A DNA stretch of 64,000 nt, taken from contig NW_027270911.1 of NCBI RefSeq assembly GCF_040938485.1, positions 682,001 to 746,000 on the forward strand, given 5' to 3'. The notes beneath the pieces are model-generated. The model had not been told where the DNA came from. It worked only from the letters and a program-made list of their open reading frames with translations, and did no database searches. Shown here piece after piece: positions 12,606 to 35,292 of this stretch (position 1 is the first letter of the stretch; each line of letters opens with the position of its first letter). A program made the position numbers and the translations under genes. The DNA is from Diadema antillarum (Eukaryota).

Positions 12606-15234
12606 ATGTCAAGTTTTTCAACGAAGCAGTTGCCGAGGCCCAGCAGCGCAGGTAGCAATCCGCTGACCAGGTCGCTGCCGTCCTCATCTCCGGGAGCGGC
12701 CGGGGCGACATCGGCTGGCAGGGTGCTCCAGTACCGGGCACTTCACACGGGGGATCGCTCACTGAAAAAGACGGCTCAAGTTTCGCCCCTTCAGATGAGT
12801 ACTCCCAACACAAGAACCGACACAGCATCGTTTAAGACTCACAAGTTCAAAGCAAGGCACAGTCAGTGGACCCCTATTTTGCATAAGCCATCAAATGAGC
12901 AGGTAATCTCATTCTCAGGCTCGAGGCTGTTTCTTACTGTAGAGTCTACTCGGCTTACTTACAGTAACTGGTAACTGTTAGTGGTAACACTAAAAGTAGT
13001 TGTGGGTAACAGTAGAGTCAATAGTAACAGTTTTATAAGTAGGTCTAACGTTAATGATTATGATTAAGTTAGATCAAGTCACATCTGCTTTTGAAGATTT
13101 AATGAATTTAGTCACCGATCGTAGAAACCCTACCTAGTTGACCGAAAGATCGGTCTGTATCTGGTTGTGGGGGATATGCTCTGCGGAGACTGCGTCTGGC
13201 TTCACAGATGTCTCTGCTCTGGAGGAGAGCGATAACGTCCAAAAAAAATAAAAGACTCCTCCAGACAGACAGATTTTTCTGTCTATTCTAGTAGTATTGA
13301 GAAATCCCAGCACGGGGCGCTGTTTTTGGTTGCTGGTGTGGTTATTCTAGTAGGTGTCTGAAGTAGTTTCAATATGGTGTTGACTTCTGAGCTTTTTAGC
13401 TTTAACGTTTCGACCACTGCCACCTTCACTCACAGAGTCAAAAAGGATGCATTAGTGCCATTACGTTAACATTTAAATGACGCCTTGGATTTCTAGATTC
13501 TACATTCTAGCTACATTGTCATTATGTTATGTCAGATCTTGAAATGATTGTTTGTCAAATCTTAGATAAGCAAAACCATTATTTTCTTTATGTATTTCTT
13601 TCTTACCTTCGATCTCTCCAGCTGTACCTAGAAAGAAGAGATCTGGTTGCTCATTGGGTAAGTAGACTACAAATGTAAATGGTGGTGCAGGGTGTTGCAG
13701 AGATATTGCAGCCAATGTCCTATTCAAAACAAGGCAGAAAGAGCCCCTTTTCTTAGAGGGGAGGGGGCTAGGGCTTGTTTTTTTGTGATTTTAGTGATCA
13801 TGTTTTTACCATGAAATGTTCAATCAAATCAACTACACCATGTTTTTACCATGAAATGTTCAATCAAATCAACTCAGAATTTTTGTTGTAAATTTGTTGT
13901 CAATTTTGTTTGTAGATTTTCAAAATGTTTAACCTAGCAATTAAATATAATTTTGTCAGCAACTTACAGGAAATAATTCGTCACAGGAGCGTAGAATTGT
14001 GATATGCTCGACATGTTCTTTATATGTCGCTACTCCCATAGATGCGAGTTTGAGAAGTATATCAATTGGTTTTCATGCTTTACAAGGATGTGACCAAGCC
14101 GTTTCAGCAAATTGATATTTCAAGCACAATTTGTGGCATTTGGCTAATTTTGTTTGAATTGTGTAATCACAGATTACTATGTTTATTATGTTTTTGTAGT
14201 ATGTCATGATCAAAAAGAAATTTTGTGAAATGAGAAAGGTTATAGCTTGTTTTATCTTTCTCAGGTGCTTTCCAAAACTATATTACAGGATTGTAGACAA
14301 ATGGCTAGCTGCTGAGCATTTGTGTACAGGATATCTCCACAGAAATAAGGCTTCCCTCTTTCTGCTCACTGTTATGTGATTTACACTAAAATCTTTCTCT
14401 TGTGCCATTGTTTCAGTGGTTCAATATGGCAAAAGAAGAAAAAAAAATGCCCTCCTACCTCTGTCTTACCACACCCCTACCCTATAGGCATGATACTCAA
14501 TTAATGCCATTTTCCACTCACCTGCCCAGTTTGACCTGTGGACAGACTCCCAGCGCAAGCGCTTTCTCCAGTTCCTGCTGGTGCACTGCCAGCGCAGCCA
14601 GCTGCTCTTCCTCCAGCATTTCTTCGACAGCGCCATCCCGCTCACCCACGTGGACTTCACCAAGATGCTGCCCCGCTTCCTCTGCCTCCACATCTTCTCC
14701 TTCCTGGACCCCCGCAGCCTGAGCCGGGCGGCGACGGTGTGCTGGCACTGGAAGTTCTTCACAGAGCAGGTGCGTTGTCGCCATGGGATTATGATGTCAG
14801 GGTGGGGTGTGTGGTACAAGTGGTATTCTTGTTGTTTGAAGATTTGTGGTGAGTCAGACCTAAAGTTCAAAACATATGAGTCCTCAGTCAAAAGATTTCT
14901 TGCTGTTGTTTTAATAGCAAAATGAAGTCATAAAGACTGCTTATAGCATATGAGTAGGAAGTTTGAATGATACTTGAATTTTCTCCTGCCAACTCTATCT
15001 GTTTGCTTTCTCTTTATACTTCATATTTTGGTAGATGTGTAGGCATGTTAGAAGAGCATGCCATCACAGTGATTATTATGATATTGTTGATACACAAAGT
15101 GTCACTTCTTTTCTCCGATGAAATCATAGTACACTAAACTAGCATGACAGCTTATGGGCTAAAAATGAGAGGAGGTGATCCCTACTGTATGGCTACTGTT
15201 CCATAACTTCACTTCCTTCCCACACCTTAAACCT

Positions 15235-26700: not shown

Positions 26701-29700
26701 AATTCTTACTGAGCACTGTAATGAAGACATGTTTGGGTTATAGTTCTGCAAAATCATGTCCTCTGTGGATATTGTACAAAGTGTGACAGCAATATCTGGA
26801 CCCATCAAAGTGTCGTCTAATTTTCTGTGTAAATAAACGGGAAAAAAGGTTCCAACTGCTAGTCATTAGATGGAATGTAGATTTCAATCTTACTCTTTTG
26901 AATCTCATGAATGTCTGCACTCTGATTAATCTTTGTGTTTGCACTCAGCTCACTACACCCCCAGGGAAGACCCAATCAGAACGCAGGAAAGCAGTGGCCA
27001 ACGAGCTGCTGGAAACTCAGCGTGTCTACGTGCGCAGGCTGAACATCGTCCACAACGTCTACTACCAGAGACTCGCGGCGGCGCTGCGGTCGAATCACGC
27101 CATCATCGGTCAGACAAACCTCAATCTCATCTTCACCGACCCAAACAACATTCTCAGCGCAACAAAGTGAGTTTGAGTTGGAAGTCATCTTGCATTACCA
27201 TTGAAGAAGCTATTAAGAATGTGAGCAACCAGGACCAATAGCTGTGAAGACTAATTCACACCATCTAGTAAATACAACTGAGTTCTATGTGATCTCTGCT
27301 GCTCTGACCAAAGAAGAAAATCAATAATATGTCAATATGTCGCAAGTCCATGTTCATATCTGTTTTTAATCAACCGGTCCGTTGTGGTCAATTACACAAG
27401 ATGACTGACATACATGCTGTATGAGTGTGCTGAACAAATACTTAAAGTCTAGTGCATGTTGCTTTAAATCAATGCAGAATCACCTGACTCGAGTGCATGT
27501 TTGCCATTGGCTATATTGGGTCTAGGGCAATTGTCCCTTGCCCTGACCCTAACCCTAATCCTGAACCTAATCCTAACCCTAACCCAAACTCTCACCCTAA
27601 ACCTAACCCTAACCCTAATCTTTACTCTAACCTTATCACCAACTAGTATTTAGCAAGGGGAAGGGGGGGGGGGGGGGGGAGGTAATTGTCCACAGGGGGT
27701 AATTGCCCTGATACAGCTACATCCTTCAACTTATCCTATGAAATGTCACCCCCCCCCCCCTTTACACCTACCTGGTGCGTTTACCCTTTCTCCCCTCCCA
27801 CCCCCCTCCCCTTCCCCTCCCAGGGGTCTCTATGAGGAGCTGAAGGGACGCCTGGAGAGCTGGAGTGCCCAGCAGTGCCTGGGGGACTGCTTCGTCAAGT
27901 TCCAGTCTAAACTCAAGGCCTACACCAACTTCCACAACAACTATGCAATCATTCTCTCAACCATCGACAAGGTCAGCTTGCTTTGCCTGTTAACCTGTTA
28001 AGGACGGGCTAATTTTGCTACAACATGCATTTCCCATAGACACTTGCCCGAGTATACTCCGGACTCATCCCCAATGGGTTAAAGTGAAAACATAGTTCAC
28101 ATACACCTGTAGAGACTGTTGAATTTTACTTTATACTGGAGACATATGCAAAAGAAATGTGTGATGACGCTTTGATAACACAATTTCAATTGGGTAGTGA
28201 CGAAAATGTGAAATATTACTCAAAAAGGTACACCAGAAGTATTGTCATCTAAGGGCACACCAGATCGTGGTTGTTACATGATGTTTTATATTCAGTGACA
28301 TCGATTACAATATATCAGGCCATAGCAGTATCCGTCATGCGAGAGTGAATCGCATACTGCAGCTTGTGAGCTGCATGTGATTAAGTGCTACACTGCTAGG
28401 GCACAATTTGGTCATCTTGTACTGGTAACGTTCTACCAAACCACTGCCGCATGGGGATCGCGCTTCAGGAATAGAAGTTGTCTAATACTACCACTGAAAC
28501 TATTTTACACTTACGATCTCTACTCCAAAAACAACTCATCCTGGCAGATCATGTCAGCCGGACAAGTTTCTTGATTGACCCTTTCGATATGTGACGTATG
28601 GTACATGTAGGTATTGGATTGTTATATTGTAGTGATTTTTTATGAAATTTTAGTGATATACTTTCACATGAATTGATGGATTGTAGTAATTGTTGTATTA
28701 GTGAATGACATGAGAAGAACGCTTTAAAGATTACAGTGAAAGACCATATTCCAAGCTTAGTTTCGCTCCACCTTTGTTAGTTTGAAAATTAAAAACAAAA
28801 AAATATTTGCCTTTGAAATAGAATGGCAAATTTTTATCACATAGTCTCTCTGGGGGGCTTATCATAAACGTATACATAGACTATATGCAACTAATAGCAT
28901 CAGCTAAGTAGTTTGTTGCTGATGTATGAAAACTGTGGCACAATTTTTGTGCTGAAAATTATTGTATTTCAAACAGACAAGTTCCATCCAGCTGCTTCCT
29001 TTTTTCACTCATTCAGTGCCGAGAACAAGAACCGTCATTCCGGGCCTTCCTGAAACAGCACGATTGCTCAGCGGCCAGCGAAATGATGACTCTGGACGAG
29101 CTGTTGCTAGGCGTGGCCCACCACATCCATCACTACATCCGCCTCCTGCTGGCCCTTCACCACGCCACGCCCGACGACCACCCTGACAACGGTGACTTGC
29201 TGACGGCCATTGAGACCTTCCGGCAGCTCCAGGGTATCATTGATCAGGTGAGGAGTTGATGATGACTCCTGACCGATGACACAACATTTGCTCCTGTGAC
29301 AATTACTCTCGTCTTATTTTCTCCAGGAACTTAGAGTTAGGGTTGTGATAGGGTTTTAGGTTTAGTTTGATCTAAAGATTAGGATTAGGGTTTATGTTTG
29401 TGGGTAGAATTTATGTTTGGCTTAGAGTGCAGATATTGCATGGGAGCAATTGTCGCAGGAGCAAATGTCATGGAACCCTCCCGACCACAGTGAGATGATT
29501 TCAGCACTATACATGTAGATGAAGCAGTCACTGTAACTATCACTTGAGTTTTTTTTTTTTTAGGGGGGGGGGGAACTCCATGAAATTTGGAACAATGTTG
29601 ACACTGTTCTGCTTCTCACCTTGTGATATATATAATAATATTTCACTCTTAGACCCACACGTTCAGTTTGTGCAGAATTGTGTGTGTGTGTTTGTGCACA

Positions 29701-32700
29701 TATATACATATTATATGTTTACTGTGAATCTTAAATGCATAATGTCAACGTGGAAGCATATTTTATGAAATATCATAAAAAAGATTATATAATTTCATGC
29801 TGTTTGATTTACTAGTTGTGTTCATCATCATGTATCACATTGCAAGTGCTTTGTTAGAGGTGATATAGAAGTGGAGGAGACAGAATTTTCTCAATTCCAG
29901 CCTAATTTGGCTACACTTTTTTTGAGGTCCTTATAGAAGGGCAAGCAATTTTTTTTTTCCAAATCAGTATCCCTGACTCTCTCTTTCTTTATCTCTCTAT
30001 CTCTCTATCTATCTATCTATCTATCGCTATCTCCCTATCTGTCTATCTATNNNNNNNNNNNNNNNNNNNNNNNNNNNNNNNNNNNNNNNNNNNNNNNNNN
30101 NNNNNNNNNNNNNNNNNNNNNNNNNNNNNNNNNNNNNNNNNNNNNNNNNNNNNNNNNNNNNNNNNNNNNNNNNNNNNNNNNNNNNNNNNNNNNNNNNNNN
30201 NNNNNCCCGTGCATTGGCCGCTAACACAATACAAATTGTATTACGTTAACGGCCAATNNNNNNNNNNNNNNNNNNNNNNNNNNNNNNNNNNNNNNNNNNN
30301 NNNNNNNNNNNNNNNNNNNNNNNNNNNNNNNNNNNNNNNNNNNNNNNNNNNNNNNNNNNNNNNNNNNNNNNNNNNNNNNNNNNNNNNNNNNNNNNNNNNN
30401 NNNNNNNNNNNNNNNNNNNNNNNNNNNNNNNNNNNNATCTATCTATCTGGGTATCTATATACATTGTGTATAATAAATCTATCTATGTCTCTGTAGAACA
30501 AGCAGCGTGGTGAGAGGGAGCGGGTGCTAAAGGGTCTCCAGAAGCGCATCGTTGGCTGCCCCAGCCTCCTGGAGGCCAACCGATTCCTCATCAGGCAGGA
30601 GACTGTGGCACTCCTGGAAGCTGTCACTCTCAGCAAGTCGAGCGACATCCCAAAAGGGTGGGTACCTGCTAGTAAAGTGGATTTGAGTGCAGTAGATAAG
30701 AGTCCCAACAGGGTATGCATTGTAGCTATAAAAGTGTATTTTAGCAGTTAATATACAAATAGTGAATGGTCACGAGTGCAATGATACGAGATTTCACGAC
30801 GAGGTGAAGCCAAGTCAAATAGTGCGTCTCATTATTCACAGAGTGCGAAATCTTGTTCCATTGCACGAGTAAACACTATTTGTTTATACAAGACCTCAGA
30901 CATCAACAGATGTGGTCTGCACAGATTCTTATATTTAGTACAGAAATGGCAACCATATTTTTTTTCTTCAATGGTGAATGAATGGCGCACGCGAGAGTGA
31001 TCGGTTGAAGTTGTTGACGGTAAAATGAGTGATTGAATGTGCACGGGCCTTGTGACTGACTGTGTGCGAGTGCAGCAAGAGGTTTGTTTACTCTAACAGA
31101 GCTGTGCTGTGGAACAAAAACTATGGGTTGATTGTGACTTTATACAGGAGTCAATAGAAGTTGGTGATGTCAGCTGTGCGCTATCCATTTTTGCTCAATC
31201 AAAATTGCACAACTAAACAGCAAGATTGTGCAGTGTCACTTTTAACTGCATGTCACATGATCATATTCATGTATATAGCTCACCAGCAGGAAATGCTCGA
31301 ATATGGATTCATTTTAAAGAGCTTTTGAATCAAGAACAAGTTATCATTGGAGTAATTGTTGCGTTGCTTCAGTTATCATCAGCTTGTTTCTGTGAAGTGA
31401 TGGTATGGTCTGTATGTGACTTTTCATGTAAAGGTTTATTACAAGATTCACAGAAGAGTTATTCTCTGAAAACTTTGTAACATCTGGTGCTCTGACCCAC
31501 TGAGCTATGGCAGGCCCTAGTGCAATGTTTAATCCGAGAAACCCCTAAATTCTCAATTATTGTGTGGTCAGAAACTTACTTAACCCTGATATAAACCCAA
31601 AGGATAGAAATCAACGTTGGAATAATTGCAAGGGATCACCGAAATGATGCAGATCTTTGAATAGTTAATTCTTTAAAATTTCATTTATTTTTCTCCAGGG
31701 CCGTGAAACATGTCAATGACCTCTGTCTCTTCCTGTTCAACGACGCTCTGGTTGTCACCCACCAAGGGTCGCGGCACGTGCCTTACACCCGGCGGTCAGA
31801 GATCTTCTATAAGTTTGTGGTGGCTCTGAGTCTGAGTAGACTCCAGGTGGTGGATGTGCCTGACTCAAAGTGTGAGTATAGAATGCAAGGGGGAGGAAAA
31901 ACTAACCCTTTCTTGTCCCTGGGGTGACAAGATCTTGTATCTCTCTCACAAACCATCATATGGATTTTCAGGACAGAAAAAACACTTTTTTTAATTTTCG
32001 CAGAATGATGAAAATTTGGATGTCAAGTAATATAGAAACATTGTTTTGGATTACATTCATACAAAGTGTACCTATAATGTTTTAAAACTCAAATAAGTAA
32101 TTCTCATATTCAAAATGGAGTTAGGACCTTTTTGAATGTACACATTGTAGCCCACTGAGATATGACCCCCTTGATGCCTCAGTTACATACCACTGTGAGT
32201 CAGTATTCTCTTTCACATGTAGTATCTGTTTCCTGAAAAACTATTTCCAACACACAAGTGATACAATACAATTATTATGTTGTTTCTTTGATTGCTTGTA
32301 GCACAGAAAATAAAACAAAGGTTACAATTCGATGTTCATGCTGTCTTTGTCTGGGCTGTAGATATAGCAAACTAAATCATATGTGTGCTTTTGTTCCTAA
32401 TATTTTGTTCATGAAGGTTAATCAGAGCAGCATGCACGAGCAAAAACTGAATGTTTGTGACATGCTGTGCAGTTGTTATGGACCGATACAGTACAGTATT
32501 TTACAACGGGTAAAACAACAAGAGTTTATTGTTGTGTGGTGTGGTAAAGCTTTGACAAGTCGTGGATTTTTTTTAAAGACACCTTCAAATTTGGGCCTCA
32601 CTTCACAAAAGATGTTAGGATAGCAATTCTTGCTAGAATGCCAACTTCTTGTAGCATCAACCAATCAGGAAGCGGGATTCTTGTCACTACCATGACAATT

Positions 32701-33473
32701 GCCATTACAGGAAGAGTTGCATTCATGAAAGAAAGATATTATTCAGAGGGGTAAAGGTTCAGGTTGCGAGTTTCTTCACTTTGTCTCCCTCTACAAATTA
32801 AACTTGTTAAGATCGCAACTGCTGATCTGTAAATCAATTAACAAACATGTCGGAAAAAGGAACCAGTGGGACTCGAACCTGTCATCTACTGCTTTCCGGG
32901 CAGCGACACTACCACCAGGCTGTCTTTCTTTCATTTAATATGCCTTGTCCGCCTTGGACTACTTAACATAACAATGTCGGAATTTAGGAGCTTGGGTATT
33001 TTGTCCATGTTCGTCGCGTCACTGCCGGCAACCAGGGACAGCCTGGTGGTAGTGTCGCTGCCCGGAAAGCAGTAGATGACAGGTTCGAGTCCCACTGGTT
33101 CCTTTTTCCGACATATTTGTTAATTTACAGATCAGCAGTTGCGATCTTAACAAATTTAATTTGTAGAGGGAGACAAAGTGAAGAAACTCGCACCTGAAGT
33201 TGCATTCATGTCAACTTTTTTTTAACCCGTTCTGGGCCGATGAGTCAAATGTGCATAAATTTTAAACACGTAACCCATGGACAGAAAGTTAATGTGGCTT
33301 GCAGAGGTTTAATGAAATGGACCCATGGCTTTCCATCTCCAGATATCCAGAATGCGATCCAGCTAGTGTCCCCCAAGAAGAGGCTGCTCTGCTCTGCTGA
33401 GGACTACTCCTCCAAGCTATCCCTGCTCAGCGTTCTGGAGGAGGCCGTCCGGGCGGCGCTGGACCTGGACTGA
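12606..33473 (+). CDS. ECT2L: ECT2-like protein (F-box, central DUF4347-like region, RhoGEF DH-PH), 21 coding exons, 1138 aa
   Basis: Exons 12606-12902, 13622-13657, 14530-14769, 15271-15408, 15979-16081, 17424-17632, 18860-18996, 19649-19781, 20384-20499, 21482-21660, 22468-22560, 23322-23513, 23955-24061, 24811-24948, 26194-26430, 26949-27166, 27824-27971, 29017-29247, 30497-30657, 31699-31871 and 33343-33473 total 3417 nt with frame kept throughout. Motifs: WTP...LYLERRDLVAHWFDLWTDSQRK, F-box LPRFLCLHIFSFLDPRSL, WMPKC..GW..PY.P.ENEYG.WK.HYI, RVLLISSEVPAY, DH ELLETQRVYV and PH LFLFNDAL. Extra exons could hide in the N-gaps. Confidence 0.92.
13799..13874. repeat. 40-bp-period direct duplication
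   Basis: catgtttttaccatgaaatgttcaatcaaatcaact occurs twice, 40 bp apart. Confidence 0.9.
15575..15790. repeat. Degenerate (GAT/ATG)n low-complexity tract
   Basis: Repeating gat/atg/gtg trimers. Similar tracts occur at 3640-3800, 23715-23900 and 60700-60780. Confidence 0.8.
16528..17295. mobile_element. Non-autonomous DNA transposon, about 770 bp
   Basis: TIRs atatgtgacccgctacaacaaaatgatcctaaagtcg / cgactttaggacctttttgttgtagcgggtcacatat; no transposase ORF. Confidence 0.8.
18050..18571. mobile_element. Tc1/mariner-pogo-type MITE (CAGTG termini, TA TSD)
   Basis: TA|cagtgcactcctgttacaacgaa ... ttcgttataacgggagtgcactg|TA, with many internal gttataacgaa repeats. Confidence 0.85.
23515..23623. 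repeat. 29-bp minisatellite, about 3.5 copies
   Basis: Unit tgaccagattcaaagggaggcataggtga at 23522, 23551 and 23580, partial at 23609. Confidence 0.9.
25844..25991. mobile_element. PIF/Harbinger-type MITE with internal CCAAT motif
   Basis: TIRs gggacccgtttcataaaacttgt / acaagttttatgaaacgggcccc; central agccaatcag. Confidence 0.75.
27518..27714. mobile_element. MITE with (CCCTAA)n telomere-like core (family B)
   Basis: Ends gggtctagggcaatt / aattgccctgatac, core of cctaaccctaat repeats, decayed 9-bp flanking repeat ggctatatt / agctacatc. Confidence 0.65.
27994..28078. mobile_element. 85-bp piggyBac-type MITE (TTAA TSD), copy 1 of 3
   Basis: TTAA|cctgttaaggacgggct...catttcccatagacacttgcccgagtatactc...caatggg|TTAA. 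Homologous copies at 39284-39368 (inverted) and 46076-46159. Confidence 0.8.
29275..29477. mobile_element. MITE family A, copy 2 (opposite orientation), TTAGGG-like core
   Basis: Reverse complement of 5843-6057; TSD ctcctgacc / ctcccgacc (8 of 9 match). Confidence 0.85.
29985..30050. repeat. (TC)n/(TATC)n microsatellite running into an assembly gap
   Basis: tctc and tatc repeats that resume after the gap at 30437. Confidence 0.85.
30752..30888. mobile_element. Small TIR element
   Basis: Imperfect TIRs tatacaaatagtgaatggtcacgagtgcaatg / cattgcacgagtaaacactatttgtttata. Confidence 0.6.
32591..33225. mobile_element. Harbinger-type MITE split by the tRNA-like foldback insertion
   Basis: 32591-32727 matches the first 130 bp of the intact copy at 35136-35292. 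The remainder (tcaactttt) resumes after 33210. Confidence 0.7.
32728..33197. mobile_element. Unclassified foldback element with two inverted tRNA-like (Pol III B-box) heads and 13-bp TSD
   Basis: Inverted arms 32758-32924 and 33037-33198. GGTTCGAGTCC at 33082-33092 and its reverse complement at 32869-32879. Direct repeat agttgcattcatg at 32715-32727 and 33198-33210. Confidence 0.8.
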
Positions 33474-34480
33474 AGCCCCACCCACTTTGTACCACCCGCT
33501 CGGTGATCTCTATGACCACCGGCCGCCATGATGACAGACTTCGCTGGCAGGGACGCGTAGATTTCTACGTTGAAAGTAGCAGACTGCCATGTGAGGACTT
33601 CGGCACTTAACACACATCACATTCTTCCCCTTACCGCTATATATATATGTACCCTGGCCAGTCAAGAATGCATCTCTCCTGATTATGTTGTCACCCTAAA
33701 TCTAGCCACTCTGCTCACATGAGATATCCGTCATGGCGTGTTTGGGAACGTGATGGTTATGTTCACTCCTTGTGGATTTGCGTCCACCAGAATTTACAGA
33801 AGACTTCTGTGGACATCTTACAGAAATGAACTGTAATGACATACATGACCAGTCAACACAAACATTGTATTTGCCAAGTTGTTGTTTTTAAAGACATACA
33901 CACACACACACAAAAAAAAAATTGTTCAAGGGAATGCAGTGTGCCATTTTCAAATGTTTTGGTGAAGAAAGCCTTACCCCCATTTGTGGTGGTAGTAAAA
34001 GGGGTTTTGTGAGATGAGTGATGGAATTTCTTGGAGTAGTGGGATGGGTATATTGCAACTAAACTCTGAGCAGAATAGAAGTGTTCACAATGTCCAAATC
34101 CAGCATTTGGTGGGTGCATGTGTATCTCTCCACAAAATTTAAGTGTGTGATGCCTATCAAGACTGGGCAGCTATGCCACAGATTACAGGCTGAAAAGATG
34201 AAGACTAACATTTTCGCTTGTATCCTCAAGCAAGCTGGTGGGAGGGGCTCTTCTCAGCTGAGGTATTATACGTAGCCTTCCATGTTTTAGCTGCTTACCT
34301 ATCTATCTAAAAACTATTCCAAGATTTCTTCTTGCAACTTCCAGGTAGACATACTCACAGTCTCGTTATGCAGTGCATTTACCATGTATTCAAGTTTACA
34401 GGTGGGTTAAAGCGAAGTTTGAGGCCAAGTTGATGTTCCAGATTGTTCACAGAGACTGATTCTCTGTTTGGGATTTAGAG

Positions 34481-34990: not shown

Positions 34991-35135
34991 TTGTAGAATG
35001 AATGTAGTCTTCAAGCTGTGATTGTTGTGGTCTTGTTGTACATACTGAGCAATATGTTTAGTGCCTTGAATACAGGATTGATACATGTGATGGGATAGAG
35101 GTATGATGTGTGTTTGGTTGTGAGAGACTCTCCAG

Positions 35136-35292
35136 GGCCCCATTTCATAAAAGATGTTAGGATAGCAACTCTTGCTAGAATGGCAATTTCCCATAGCAAC
35201 AGCCAATCAGGAAGCTGGATTCTTGTCATTACCATGACAATTGCCATTCCAGCAAGAGTTGCTATCATATCAACTTTTTATGAAATGGGGCC
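35136..35292. mobile_element. PIF/Harbinger-type MITE (3-bp TSD CAG)
   Basis: TIRs ggccccatttcataaaag / cttttatgaaatggggcc, flanked by cag at 35133-35135 and 35293-35295. Confidence 0.85.

What the first reader, a model, noticed from the sequence alone, without database searches (positions are those of the whole stretch)
32715..33210. Foldback element with two outward-facing tRNA-like heads and a 13-bp target-site duplication
Seen: arms of about 165 bp in inverted orientation around a 112-bp spacer. Each arm contains GGTTCGAGTCC (Pol III B-box). The right copy folds tRNA-like over 33030-33100: acceptor-like aaccag/ctggtt, anticodon-like stem ctgc/gcag with loop ccGGAaa, decayed T stem. A 13-bp direct repeat (agttgcattcatg) flanks it, and it splits an older Harbinger MITE. 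Established: SINEs are single-headed with long variable TSDs, while MITEs have TIRs with short fixed TSDs. This hybrid fits neither, so it may be an undescribed element class (inference). It would also form about 160 bp of dsRNA in the last ECT2L intron.
Basis: partly seen in the sequence, partly recalled or inferred. Interest (0 to 1): 0.72.

Follow-up and report, generated by a model that had tools for sequence, protein, structure and literature searches.

The report
Penelope-style inverted insertion of tRNA-like repeat
The "foldback element" is one young insertion of a very abundant ~305-base, tRNA-like repeat of this sea-urchin genome, laid down as two head-to-head copies in the way Penelope-like retrotransposons insert. 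It is therefore a by-product of a known insertion mechanism, not a new SINE/MITE hybrid class.

Summary
Two ~165-bp inverted arms, a perfect B box in each, and a 12-13-bp direct repeat are present. A colinear second copy of the locus (contig C279) lacks the 470-bp insert and has the 13-mer once, so the target-site duplication is real.

The arms are not the ends of a foldback transposon. They are two copies of a ~305-bp unit with thousands of genomic hits. The "spacer" is the 5' part of the right-hand copy.

Genome-wide the unit occurs as 5'-truncated monomers, head-to-tail arrays with a 300-bp period, and head-to-head pairs. At least 11 other foldback copies each have a different central junction, with TSDs of 9-15 bp. 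Outer ends fall at two fixed 3' termini 30 nt apart (unit ~275 and ~305), usually one of each.

Partial tandems, an inverted 5'-truncated copy, a 30-40-bp "tail" at one end and short variable TSDs are the published signature of Penelope-like element (PLE) insertions. No hammerhead ribozyme and no autonomous partner were found; only four PLE families could be sampled.

I read it as a PLE-mobilised non-autonomous retroelement carrying a tRNA-like gene module (confidence ~0.7). The scan reached the same reading for other tRNA-like repeats elsewhere in this genome.

The parts
32715..32727 (.). Left copy of the target-site duplication (AGTTGCATTCATG)
   Evidence: Exact 13-nt direct repeat. The empty site on C279/L032 has it once.
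32728..32757 (-). 30-nt 'tail' (unit positions 276-305), present only at this end of the insert
   Evidence: It follows unit position 275 in tandem arrays and in other copies. It is absent at the right end of this insert.
32758..32924 (-). Left arm: a 5'-truncated copy of the repeat unit (unit positions 114-275) in minus orientation
   Evidence: BLAST of the unit against the locus: unit 114-305 on the minus strand at 96%.
32924..33198 (+). Right arm: unit positions 1-275 in plus orientation, ending at the inner 3' terminus (site A) without the tail.
   Evidence: The same 1-275 stretch is found head-to-tail in arrays.
33027..33103 (+). tRNA-like module of the right copy (acceptor-like and anticodon-like stems, decayed T stem)
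   Evidence: Rfam tRNA-Sec at 17.9 bits, sub-threshold. ARAGORN negative. Near-invariant in 76-92 copies.
33082..33092 (+). B box GGTTCGAGTCC (right copy)
   Evidence: Read directly. Each position is kept in 85-92 of ~92 copies.
33103..33107 (+). T5 run directly after the tRNA-like module (Pol III terminator-like)
   Evidence: Read directly. Invariant in 92 of 92 copies.
32858..32924 (-). tRNA-like module of the left copy, lacking its first ~10 nt. Includes the B-box complement at 32869-32879 and the A5 run at 32854-32858.
   Evidence: Mirror image of 33037-33103.
33198..33210 (.). Right copy of the target-site duplication
32593..33237 (.). Older ~165-bp MITE copy that the insert interrupts (32593-32727 plus 33211-~33237)
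   Evidence: Other copies run through the junction of the reconstructed empty site. TIRs are seen in 9 copies.
33345..33473 (+). Terminal coding exon of the host F-box/RhoGEF (ECT2L-like) gene, ~135 bp downstream of the insert
   Evidence: Open frame ending in a stop, conserved on C279 with 2 amino-acid changes. F-box and RhoGEF exons lie upstream.

Best explanation
The 470-bp insert (32728-33197) is one retrotransposition event of an abundant, young, non-autonomous repeat. I infer it was made by the machinery of a Penelope-like element (PLE).

The unit is ~305 bp. It has a ~100-nt 5' region, then a tRNA-like module (unit 104-180) with a perfect B box, followed at once by a T5 run. Next comes a ~90-nt body ending at 3' terminus A (~275), then a 30-nt tail ending at 3' terminus B (~305).

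Proposed mechanism (inferred):
- The PLE endonuclease nicks both target strands about 9-15 bp apart.
- Both exposed 3'-OH ends prime reverse transcription on copies of the unit RNA.
- One starts at site B (with tail), the other at site A (without tail).
- The two cDNAs run towards each other, are 5'-truncated at arbitrary points, and are joined head-to-head.
- Gap repair duplicates the 12-13-bp target.

Here one arm covers unit 305->114 and the other 275->1, so 162 nt are present twice in inverted orientation.

What is shown: the unit, its copy structure, the two fixed 3' termini, the variable junctions, the variable TSDs and the empty site. What is inferred: that a PLE enzyme did it, and that both strands were primed.

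The tRNA-like module is most likely a captured tRNA gene with its terminator. It cannot by itself give a full-length Pol III transcript, because of the invariant T5 run. Whether it serves as promoter, as an RNase P/Z processing signal or as mere cargo is open.
For: 1. Repeat family: 2722-3109 first-look candidates for an arm or for the insert. Depth in DNA runs of two organisms is roughly 10^4 times that of the unique flanks (rough, contig-based).

2. Head-to-tail arrays with a 300-bp period: 7.7 copies at 98% in L015, and an array of ~19 units on C480.

3. At least 11 further foldback copies (12 loci, two probably allelic) have different central junctions, always 5' end to 5' end. Junctions in the less biased sample are also scattered (132|223, 200|1, 244|231, 11|229, 137|194, 64|125).

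4. Census of termini in 84 loci:
- 3' ends next to flank cluster at unit 270-279 (20) and 300-305 (27).
- No tail-to-tail junction was seen.
- 5' ends abut an inverted copy 42 times, a same-strand copy 30 times and flank only 14 times.

5. In most foldbacks one outer end carries the 30-nt tail and the other stops at ~275.

6. Foldback TSDs flank the whole composite and vary from 9 to 15 bp: 9-10, 14-15, 12, 13, 8-11, 12, 13 with one mismatch, and 9. Chance of a >=9-nt exact repeat at such boundaries is below 1% per locus.

7. The empty site on colinear C279 has a single 13-mer.

8. Published PLE anatomy:
- Partial tandems, an adjacent inverted 5'-truncated copy, and a 30-40-bp tail often at only one end (PMC8557442).
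- A 9-bp TSD around inverted pLTRs with a 31-bp optional tail, and head-to-head as the most frequent arrangement (PMC3846280).
- A purified PLE protein cleaves and extends both strands and starts reverse transcription at two adjacent internal sites that bracket the tail (PMC11167929).

9. The genome holds many GIY-YIG-bearing long ORFs of up to 1031 aa: 585 candidates, of which the 150 scored all passed the Pfam cut-off, often in inverted pairs.
Against: - No autonomous partner was identified. The 3' regions of four sampled GIY-YIG-bearing families (L085-L092) share nothing significant with the unit.
- No PLE coding sequence lies next to units in 84 loci.
- No hammerhead ribozyme was found, by Rfam scans of the window and of a tandem array or by a core-motif search. 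Canonical PLEs and metazoan retrozymes have one; Naiad/Chlamys PLEs do not.
- Published PLE TSDs (8-10 bp in Adineta) are somewhat shorter than some seen here.
- The two arms of a foldback are not clearly more alike than random copies: 0.85-0.98 within pairs against a mean of 0.94 between copies. Shared private variants therefore do not prove the single-event origin. That rests on the TSDs and the empty site.
Confidence: 0.7

Rival explanations
1. A classical tRNA-derived SINE mobilised by a LINE, with the inverted copies produced by twin priming: the second target-strand nick primes on the same RNA internally.
For: The TSDs are variable and 9-15 bp long. The topology TSD - inverted 5' segment - direct 3' segment with tail - TSD is that of twin priming (mechanism from my own knowledge of Ostertag and Kazazian 2001). 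A tRNA-like module with a B box is present. Copies are 5'-truncated.
Against: - The inverted arm always begins at the same internal site (~275), not at variable microhomology sites.
- The two arms overlap by ~160 nt rather than being adjacent segments of one RNA.
- Head-to-tail arrays and head-to-head pairs are the rule, not the exception.
- The tRNA module lies ~100 nt inside the unit and is followed by an invariant T5 terminator.
- There is no poly(A) tail.
Confidence: 0.15
2. A new class of foldback or MITE-like DNA transposon with long tRNA-bearing terminal inverted repeats and a 13-bp TSD.
For: Long, nearly perfect inverted arms and a flanking duplication. The foldback form recurs at 12 or more loci. 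Foldback transposons (the TU family) are known in sea urchins, from my own knowledge.
Against: - TSD length varies from 9 to 15 bp.
- Arm lengths and central junctions differ in every copy.
- The two ends are asymmetric, with the tail on one side only.
- The same unit also forms monomers and one-orientation arrays.
- Copies are graded by 5' truncation.
Confidence: 0.03
3. An ordinary single insertion followed by a local inverted duplication, or two independent nested insertions, or an assembly artefact.
For: The two arms differ at ~2%. Repeats of this kind are hard to assemble (stated in PMC8557442). No read-derived contig spans the central junction.
Against: - The TSD brackets the whole composite, and the empty site lacks both arms.
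- The same architecture with its own TSD recurs at many loci.
- A 141-nt contig of run X1 crosses the left flank/tail junction without mismatch. X1 may, however, be the source sample.
Confidence: 0.05

Closest known systems
Insertion architecture of endonuclease-positive Penelope-like elements (Penelope/Poseidon, Neptune, Nematis, Naiad/Chlamys)
   Same: Partial head-to-tail tandems, an adjacent inverted 5'-truncated copy giving head-to-head inverted repeats, an optional 30-40-bp tail at one end, two discrete reverse-transcription start sites, short variable TSDs and frequent 5' truncation (PMC8557442, PMC3846280, PMC11167929).
   Different: There is no ORF (RT or GIY-YIG) in or next to the units. 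No hammerhead ribozyme was found. No sequence is shared with the four PLE families sampled. Unlike several PLE families, including those sampled here, it does not sit in microsatellites; its targets are merely AT-rich.
Metazoan non-LTR retrozymes (150-300-bp tandem repeats thought to ride on PLEs)
   Same: Small, non-coding, of similar unit size, arranged in tandem arrays, and presumed to depend on PLEs (PMC7761336, PMC8969392).
   Different: Retrozymes are defined by a type I hammerhead ribozyme and circular RNAs. This unit has no hammerhead and carries a tRNA-like gene module with a terminator instead. Circular RNA was not tested.
MRC1 and other non-autonomous Chlamys elements of Chlamydomonas
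   Same: [quoted passage not shown]
   Different: Those share their 3' ends with identified autonomous families. Here the partner is unknown. They are from a green alga, not an animal, and no tRNA module is described for them.
tRNA-derived SINEs (SINE2/tRNA)
   Same: A tRNA-related module with a consensus B box, short length, high copy number, variable TSDs and 5' truncation.
   Different: The module is internal (unit 104-180), not at the 5' end, and is followed by an invariant T5 run. The unit has two fixed 3' termini, no A-rich tail, and dominant tandem or inverted arrangements.
L1 twin-priming inversions
   Same: Same overall topology: 5' ends meet in the middle, 3' ends face outwards, and one TSD surrounds the whole.
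   Different: The internal start site is fixed and the arms overlap by 160 nt.
Foldback DNA transposons (Drosophila FB, sea-urchin TU elements; from my own knowledge)
   Same: Long inverted arms built from repeated units, and variable arm length.
   Different: Those have fixed-length TSDs (8-9 bp) and symmetrical termini. Here TSDs vary and the termini are asymmetric 3' ends of a retro-copied unit.

Membership tests
PLE-type (Penelope-like) insertion / PLE-dependent non-autonomous element | Head-to-tail partial tandems (pseudo-LTR arrangement) | tested here: met
   300-bp-period arrays and partial dimers. 30 of 86 5' ends abut a same-strand copy.
PLE-type (Penelope-like) insertion / PLE-dependent non-autonomous element | An inverted 5'-truncated copy adjacent at the 5' end (head-to-head), never tail-to-tail | tested here: met
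   12 or more foldback loci with variable junctions. 42 head-to-head and 0 tail-to-tail junctions.
PLE-type (Penelope-like) insertion / PLE-dependent non-autonomous element | An optional 30-40-bp tail at one end, i.e. two discrete 3' termini | tested here: met
   3' termini cluster at unit ~275 and ~305. Most foldbacks have one of each. In the window the tail is at 32728-32757 only.
PLE-type (Penelope-like) insertion / PLE-dependent non-autonomous element | Short target-site duplication of variable length around the whole composite | tested here: met
   9-15 bp at 10 loci. The empty site confirms 12-13 bp here.
PLE-type (Penelope-like) insertion / PLE-dependent non-autonomous element | Hammerhead ribozyme motif in the repeated part (canonical clades only; absent in Naiad/Chlamys) | tested here: not met
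   No hammerhead at E<=10 in the window or in a tandem array. No CUGANGA...GAAA core on either strand.
PLE-type (Penelope-like) insertion / PLE-dependent non-autonomous element | 3' end shared with an autonomous RT + GIY-YIG element of the same genome | tested here: inconclusive
   Four families sampled show no similarity.
Classical tRNA-derived SINE (LINE-dependent) | tRNA-derived Pol III promoter at the 5' end of the element | tested here: not met
   The module lies at unit 104-180, behind ~100 nt that belong to the unit in arrays and dispersed copies.
Classical tRNA-derived SINE (LINE-dependent) | No Pol III terminator before the 3' end, so that the whole unit is transcribed | tested here: not met
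   T5 at unit 180-184 is invariant in 92 of 92 copies.
Classical tRNA-derived SINE (LINE-dependent) | 3' part derived from a partner LINE, or an A-rich or simple-repeat tail | not testable with these tools
   No repeat library and no further genome letters were available. The end is ...CTTTCTTT(CAT) without poly(A).
MITE / foldback DNA transposon | Fixed-length TSD and symmetrical, constant terminal inverted repeats | tested here: not met
   TSDs of 9-15 bp. The arms differ in length between copies and one end carries an extra 30 nt.
L1-type twin priming | An internal priming site that varies between events; inverted and direct segments that adjoin on the RNA | tested here: not met
   The inverted arm starts at unit 273-276 in nearly all cases. 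The arms overlap by ~160 nt.

The most novel reading that the evidence does not exclude
This genome may hold SINE-like retroelements that depend on Penelope-like elements rather than LINEs, each carrying a complete tRNA-like gene (B box plus terminator) in place of the hammerhead ribozyme of retrozymes. The tRNA module could be the functional substitute for the ribozyme: RNase P/Z would cut multimeric transcripts of the arrays into unit-length templates. Alternatively it could act as a Pol III entry point. Earlier notes of this scan describe other tRNA-bearing families with the same geometry in this genome. If they hold, the association would be recurrent, not accidental. I found no description of such tRNA-type PLE passengers in the searchable literature.
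Probability: 0.3. Interest if true: 0.6.

Novelty: new variant of a known kind. Interest (0 to 1): 0.4.

Why it matters
For the finding as given, the result is deflationary. A striking two-headed foldback with a long TSD needs no new transposon class, because it is what PLE-type insertion produces.

Three things remain of value:
- The locus is a clean, dated example: filled and empty sites in one assembly, arms ~98% identical. It shows both target strands apparently primed from two fixed start sites 30 nt apart, which fits the recent in vitro result for a PLE protein.
- The family suggests that PLEs can carry tRNA-gene-bearing passengers to about 10^4 copies. This would widen the definition of SINE-like elements and would matter for repeat annotation in echinoderms, where such units may be filed as SINE, satellite, MITE or 'unknown'.
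- Thousands of head-to-head pairs are a large source of long intronic dsRNA hairpins, as here 135 bp upstream of the last exon of an ECT2L-like gene.

Tried and rejected
- tRNA gene: ARAGORN found none. Rfam gave only a sub-threshold tRNA-Sec match.
- Hammerhead or other ribozyme (retrozyme idea): Rfam at E<=10 on the window and on three tandem units, plus a regex for the catalytic core, found nothing.
- Autonomous partner:
  - A GIY-YIG scan of the genome gave 150 matches.
  - Eight regions representing four families were fetched and compared with the unit, with no significant similarity.
  - No PLE protein similarity was found in the 84 family loci.
  - No GIY-YIG hit lies near a listed unit copy (compared by eye).
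- Single-event origin from shared variants: identity within a foldback pair is not clearly above identity between copies, because the family is so uniform.
- Clustering of 5' truncation points at the tRNA module: a mild excess at unit 90-149. I discount it because the loci were selected for resemblance to this very foldback.
- RNA evidence: no run on record as RNA holds the stretch. One possible RNA run (X19) has contigs on the unit and none on the equally repetitive MITE, which is suggestive only.
- 'Harbinger' label of the host MITE: no TWA duplication was seen at nine copies, so the superfamily is left open.
- Earlier-findings look-ups by sequence and by many words returned nothing.
Full report
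**What is in the sequence**

Reading 32400-33600 and the repeat finder confirm two inverted arms: 32836-32924/33037-33125 at 99% and 32765-32837/33120-33192 at 97%. By eye they extend to 32758 and 33197. They are separated by 112 nt.
- Each arm holds GGTTCGAGTCC: 33082-33092 on the plus strand and its complement at 32869-32879.
- An exact 13-nt direct repeat lies at 32715-32727 and 33198-33210.
- ARAGORN calls no tRNA.
- Rfam gives only a sub-threshold tRNA-Sec match (17.9 bits) over 33027-33103.
- The stretch does not fold into a cloverleaf by minimum free energy.

The module is therefore tRNA-derived, with a B box and acceptor-like and anticodon-like stems, but it is not a tRNA gene. As RNA, the whole 470-nt insert would form one long hairpin (dG -325.6 kcal/mol, z = -34).

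**The duplication is a true target-site duplication**

Searching the genome with each flank found contig C279, where the two flanks overlap by exactly 13 bases. Alignment shows C279 colinear with the window from 31010 to at least 36775, at 90-98% identity. The terminal exon is intact there, with two amino-acid changes.

C279 carries a single AGTTGCCATCATG where the window has the 470-bp insert between two identical 13-mers. C279 is either the other haplotype or a very recent duplicate. Many loci in this 1.75-Gb assembly come in near-identical pairs, which favours the haplotype reading. Either way the insert is young, and its arms differ at only ~2%.

**The arms are copies of an abundant ~305-bp unit**

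One arm as query gave 2722 first-look candidates, with full-length matches at 97-99%.

The unit has these parts:
- Position 1 is window 32924, and the unit runs to 33198 (position 275).
- In other copies it continues with a 30-nt tail. In the window this tail is found only at the far left (32728-32757, minus strand).
- The tRNA-like module is at unit 104-180.
- An invariant T5 run follows at 180-184, kept in 92 of 92 copies.

The window therefore holds unit 305->114 on the minus strand joined head-to-head to unit 1->275 on the plus strand.

The unit also forms arrays with a 300-bp period: 7.7 copies at 98% in L015 and about 19 units on C480. Contigs of DNA runs from two organisms cover it at roughly 10^4 times the depth of the unique flanks. 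Depth rises from 5' to 3' (a rough figure, contig-based).

**The foldback is recurrent, but it is not a heritable design**

The whole insert as query found 11 further foldback copies at 86-90% identity, at 12 loci of which two are probably allelic. Mapped onto the unit, each has a different central junction. Examples are 274<-1|95->304, 304<-126|1->274 and 274<-148|263->304. The less biased sample shows equally scattered junctions.

A census of termini over 84 loci gave:
- 3' ends next to flank cluster at unit 270-279 (20 cases) and 300-305 (27 cases).
- No 3' end abuts an inverted copy.
- 5' ends abut an inverted copy 42 times, a same-strand copy 30 times and flank only 14 times.

Most foldbacks have the tail at one outer end and stop at ~275 at the other. 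Their TSDs bracket the whole composite and vary from 9 to 15 bp.

**What this excludes**

A foldback or MITE-type DNA transposon would have a fixed-length TSD, symmetrical ends and a constant structure. None of these holds.

L1-style twin priming has the right topology. However, it predicts variable internal priming sites and adjoining, not overlapping, segments. Here the inner start site is fixed to within a few bases and the arms overlap by ~160 nt.

A classical tRNA-SINE would have its promoter at the 5' end and no terminator inside. Here the module is internal and is followed by T5.

A one-off local inversion or an assembly artefact is unlikely. The empty site lacks both arms, and the same architecture with its own TSD recurs at many loci.

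**What it matches**

The literature held here describes exactly this anatomy for Penelope-like elements.
- PMC3846280: an Adineta example with inverted pLTRs, a 31-bp optional tail and a 9-bp TSD, with head-to-head as the most frequent arrangement.
- PMC11167929: a purified PLE protein cleaves and extends both DNA strands. It starts reverse transcription at two adjacent internal sites that bracket the tail.

The two termini at ~275 and ~305 fit that picture, and so does the usual 'one of each' pattern. Tail ends that sometimes run on into the next unit's first bases point to initiation inside a longer, multimeric RNA.

The genome is rich in long ORFs with GIY-YIG domains, often in inverted pairs. 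Non-autonomous PLE passengers are known: metazoan retrozymes and MRC1.

**What is missing**

I found no hammerhead ribozyme.

I could not identify the autonomous partner. Four sampled GIY-YIG-bearing families share nothing with the unit. No PLE coding sequence lies beside units.

The lack of a hammerhead is compatible with Naiad-type PLEs, which also lack it. That is a lead, not a result.

The role of the tRNA-like module is open. The invariant B box and T5 run suggest a captured tRNA gene with its own terminator. Such a gene would yield only an ~85-nt Pol III product, not the transposition template.

A possible RNA library (X19) has contigs on the unit and none on the equally repetitive flanking MITE. 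This hints at transcription but proves nothing.

**Host context**

The insert sits ~25 bp from the right end of a ~165-bp MITE with TIR C[AT]GGGCCCCATTTCAT and more than 1500 candidates. Other copies of that MITE run through the reconstructed empty site. I saw no TWA duplication, so the 'Harbinger' label is unverified.

The plus-strand gene has an F-box exon near 14.6 kb and a RhoGEF exon near 27.8 kb. Its terminal exon is at 33345-33473. This fits an ECT2L-like gene whose last intron holds the insert, 135 bp before the acceptor site.

**Relation to earlier notes of this scan**

Notes on other DNA of this genome report other tRNA-like repeats of ~325-328 bp laid head-to-head in (TA)n tracts 'the way Penelope-like retroelements insert', and a tRNA-Arg-headed palindromic element. 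I reached the PLE reading from the termini census and the literature before seeing these notes, and I did not test them.

The present family differs from those: it is ~305 bp and shows no microsatellite targeting. If the notes are right, tRNA-bearing PLE passengers are a recurrent theme in this genome. The notes also say the genome is a sea urchin (one names Diadema antillarum), which I did not verify.

**Verdict**

The proposed new hybrid class is not supported. The locus is an ordinary product of PLE-type insertion by an abundant, apparently undescribed, tRNA-module-bearing non-autonomous family.

My confidence in the PLE-type mechanism is 0.7. Interest is 0.4, mostly for the family rather than for this copy.

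Noticed in passing
window 32593-32727 + 33211-33237; second copy at window 35135-35279: A ~165-bp MITE family with 14-17-bp TIRs (C[AT]GGGCCCCATTTCAT) and more than 1500 first-look candidates genome-wide. No obvious TWA or 8-bp TSD was seen in nine copies, so the superfamily is undetermined.
   Followed up: partly
window 33220-33317: A second, different ~97-bp interspersed repeat (394 first-look candidates, ~80% identity) abuts the MITE, just upstream of the terminal exon of the ECT2L-like gene.
   Followed up: no
C23 (window) versus C279 (L032, L036): The two contigs are colinear for at least 5.7 kb at 90-98% identity. Many family loci come in near-identical pairs on different contigs (C1165/C1144, C783/C770, C793/C41, C607/C135). 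The 1.75-Gb assembly probably holds both haplotypes, which gives filled and empty sites for young insertions for free.
   Followed up: partly
L085, L087, L091, L092 (GIY-YIG-bearing elements on C348, C705, C316, C108): Copies of GIY-YIG-bearing elements end in or next to dinucleotide microsatellites. In L091 two copies face each other across one. Many GIY-YIG hits lie in closely spaced inverted pairs.
   Followed up: no
L013:1669-1685 and L009:~1880-1900: One monomer copy ends at unit ~272 and is followed by a T13 run. Another copy has an expanded A-run inside the tail. Both are length-variable homopolymers at or near the 3' termini.
   Followed up: no
run X19 laid on window 32725-33192: A small size-fractionated 'metagenomic RNA-Seq' library from an echinoderm has contigs on the repeat unit, deepest over unit ~176-270, but none on the equally repetitive MITE flank. 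This may reflect transcription of the family.
   Followed up: partly
window 14581-14925 and 27738-28001 (+): F-box-like and RhoGEF exon matches support an ECT2L-like gene on the plus strand, upstream of the Parkin gene that earlier notes place at ~54-61 kb.
   Followed up: partly
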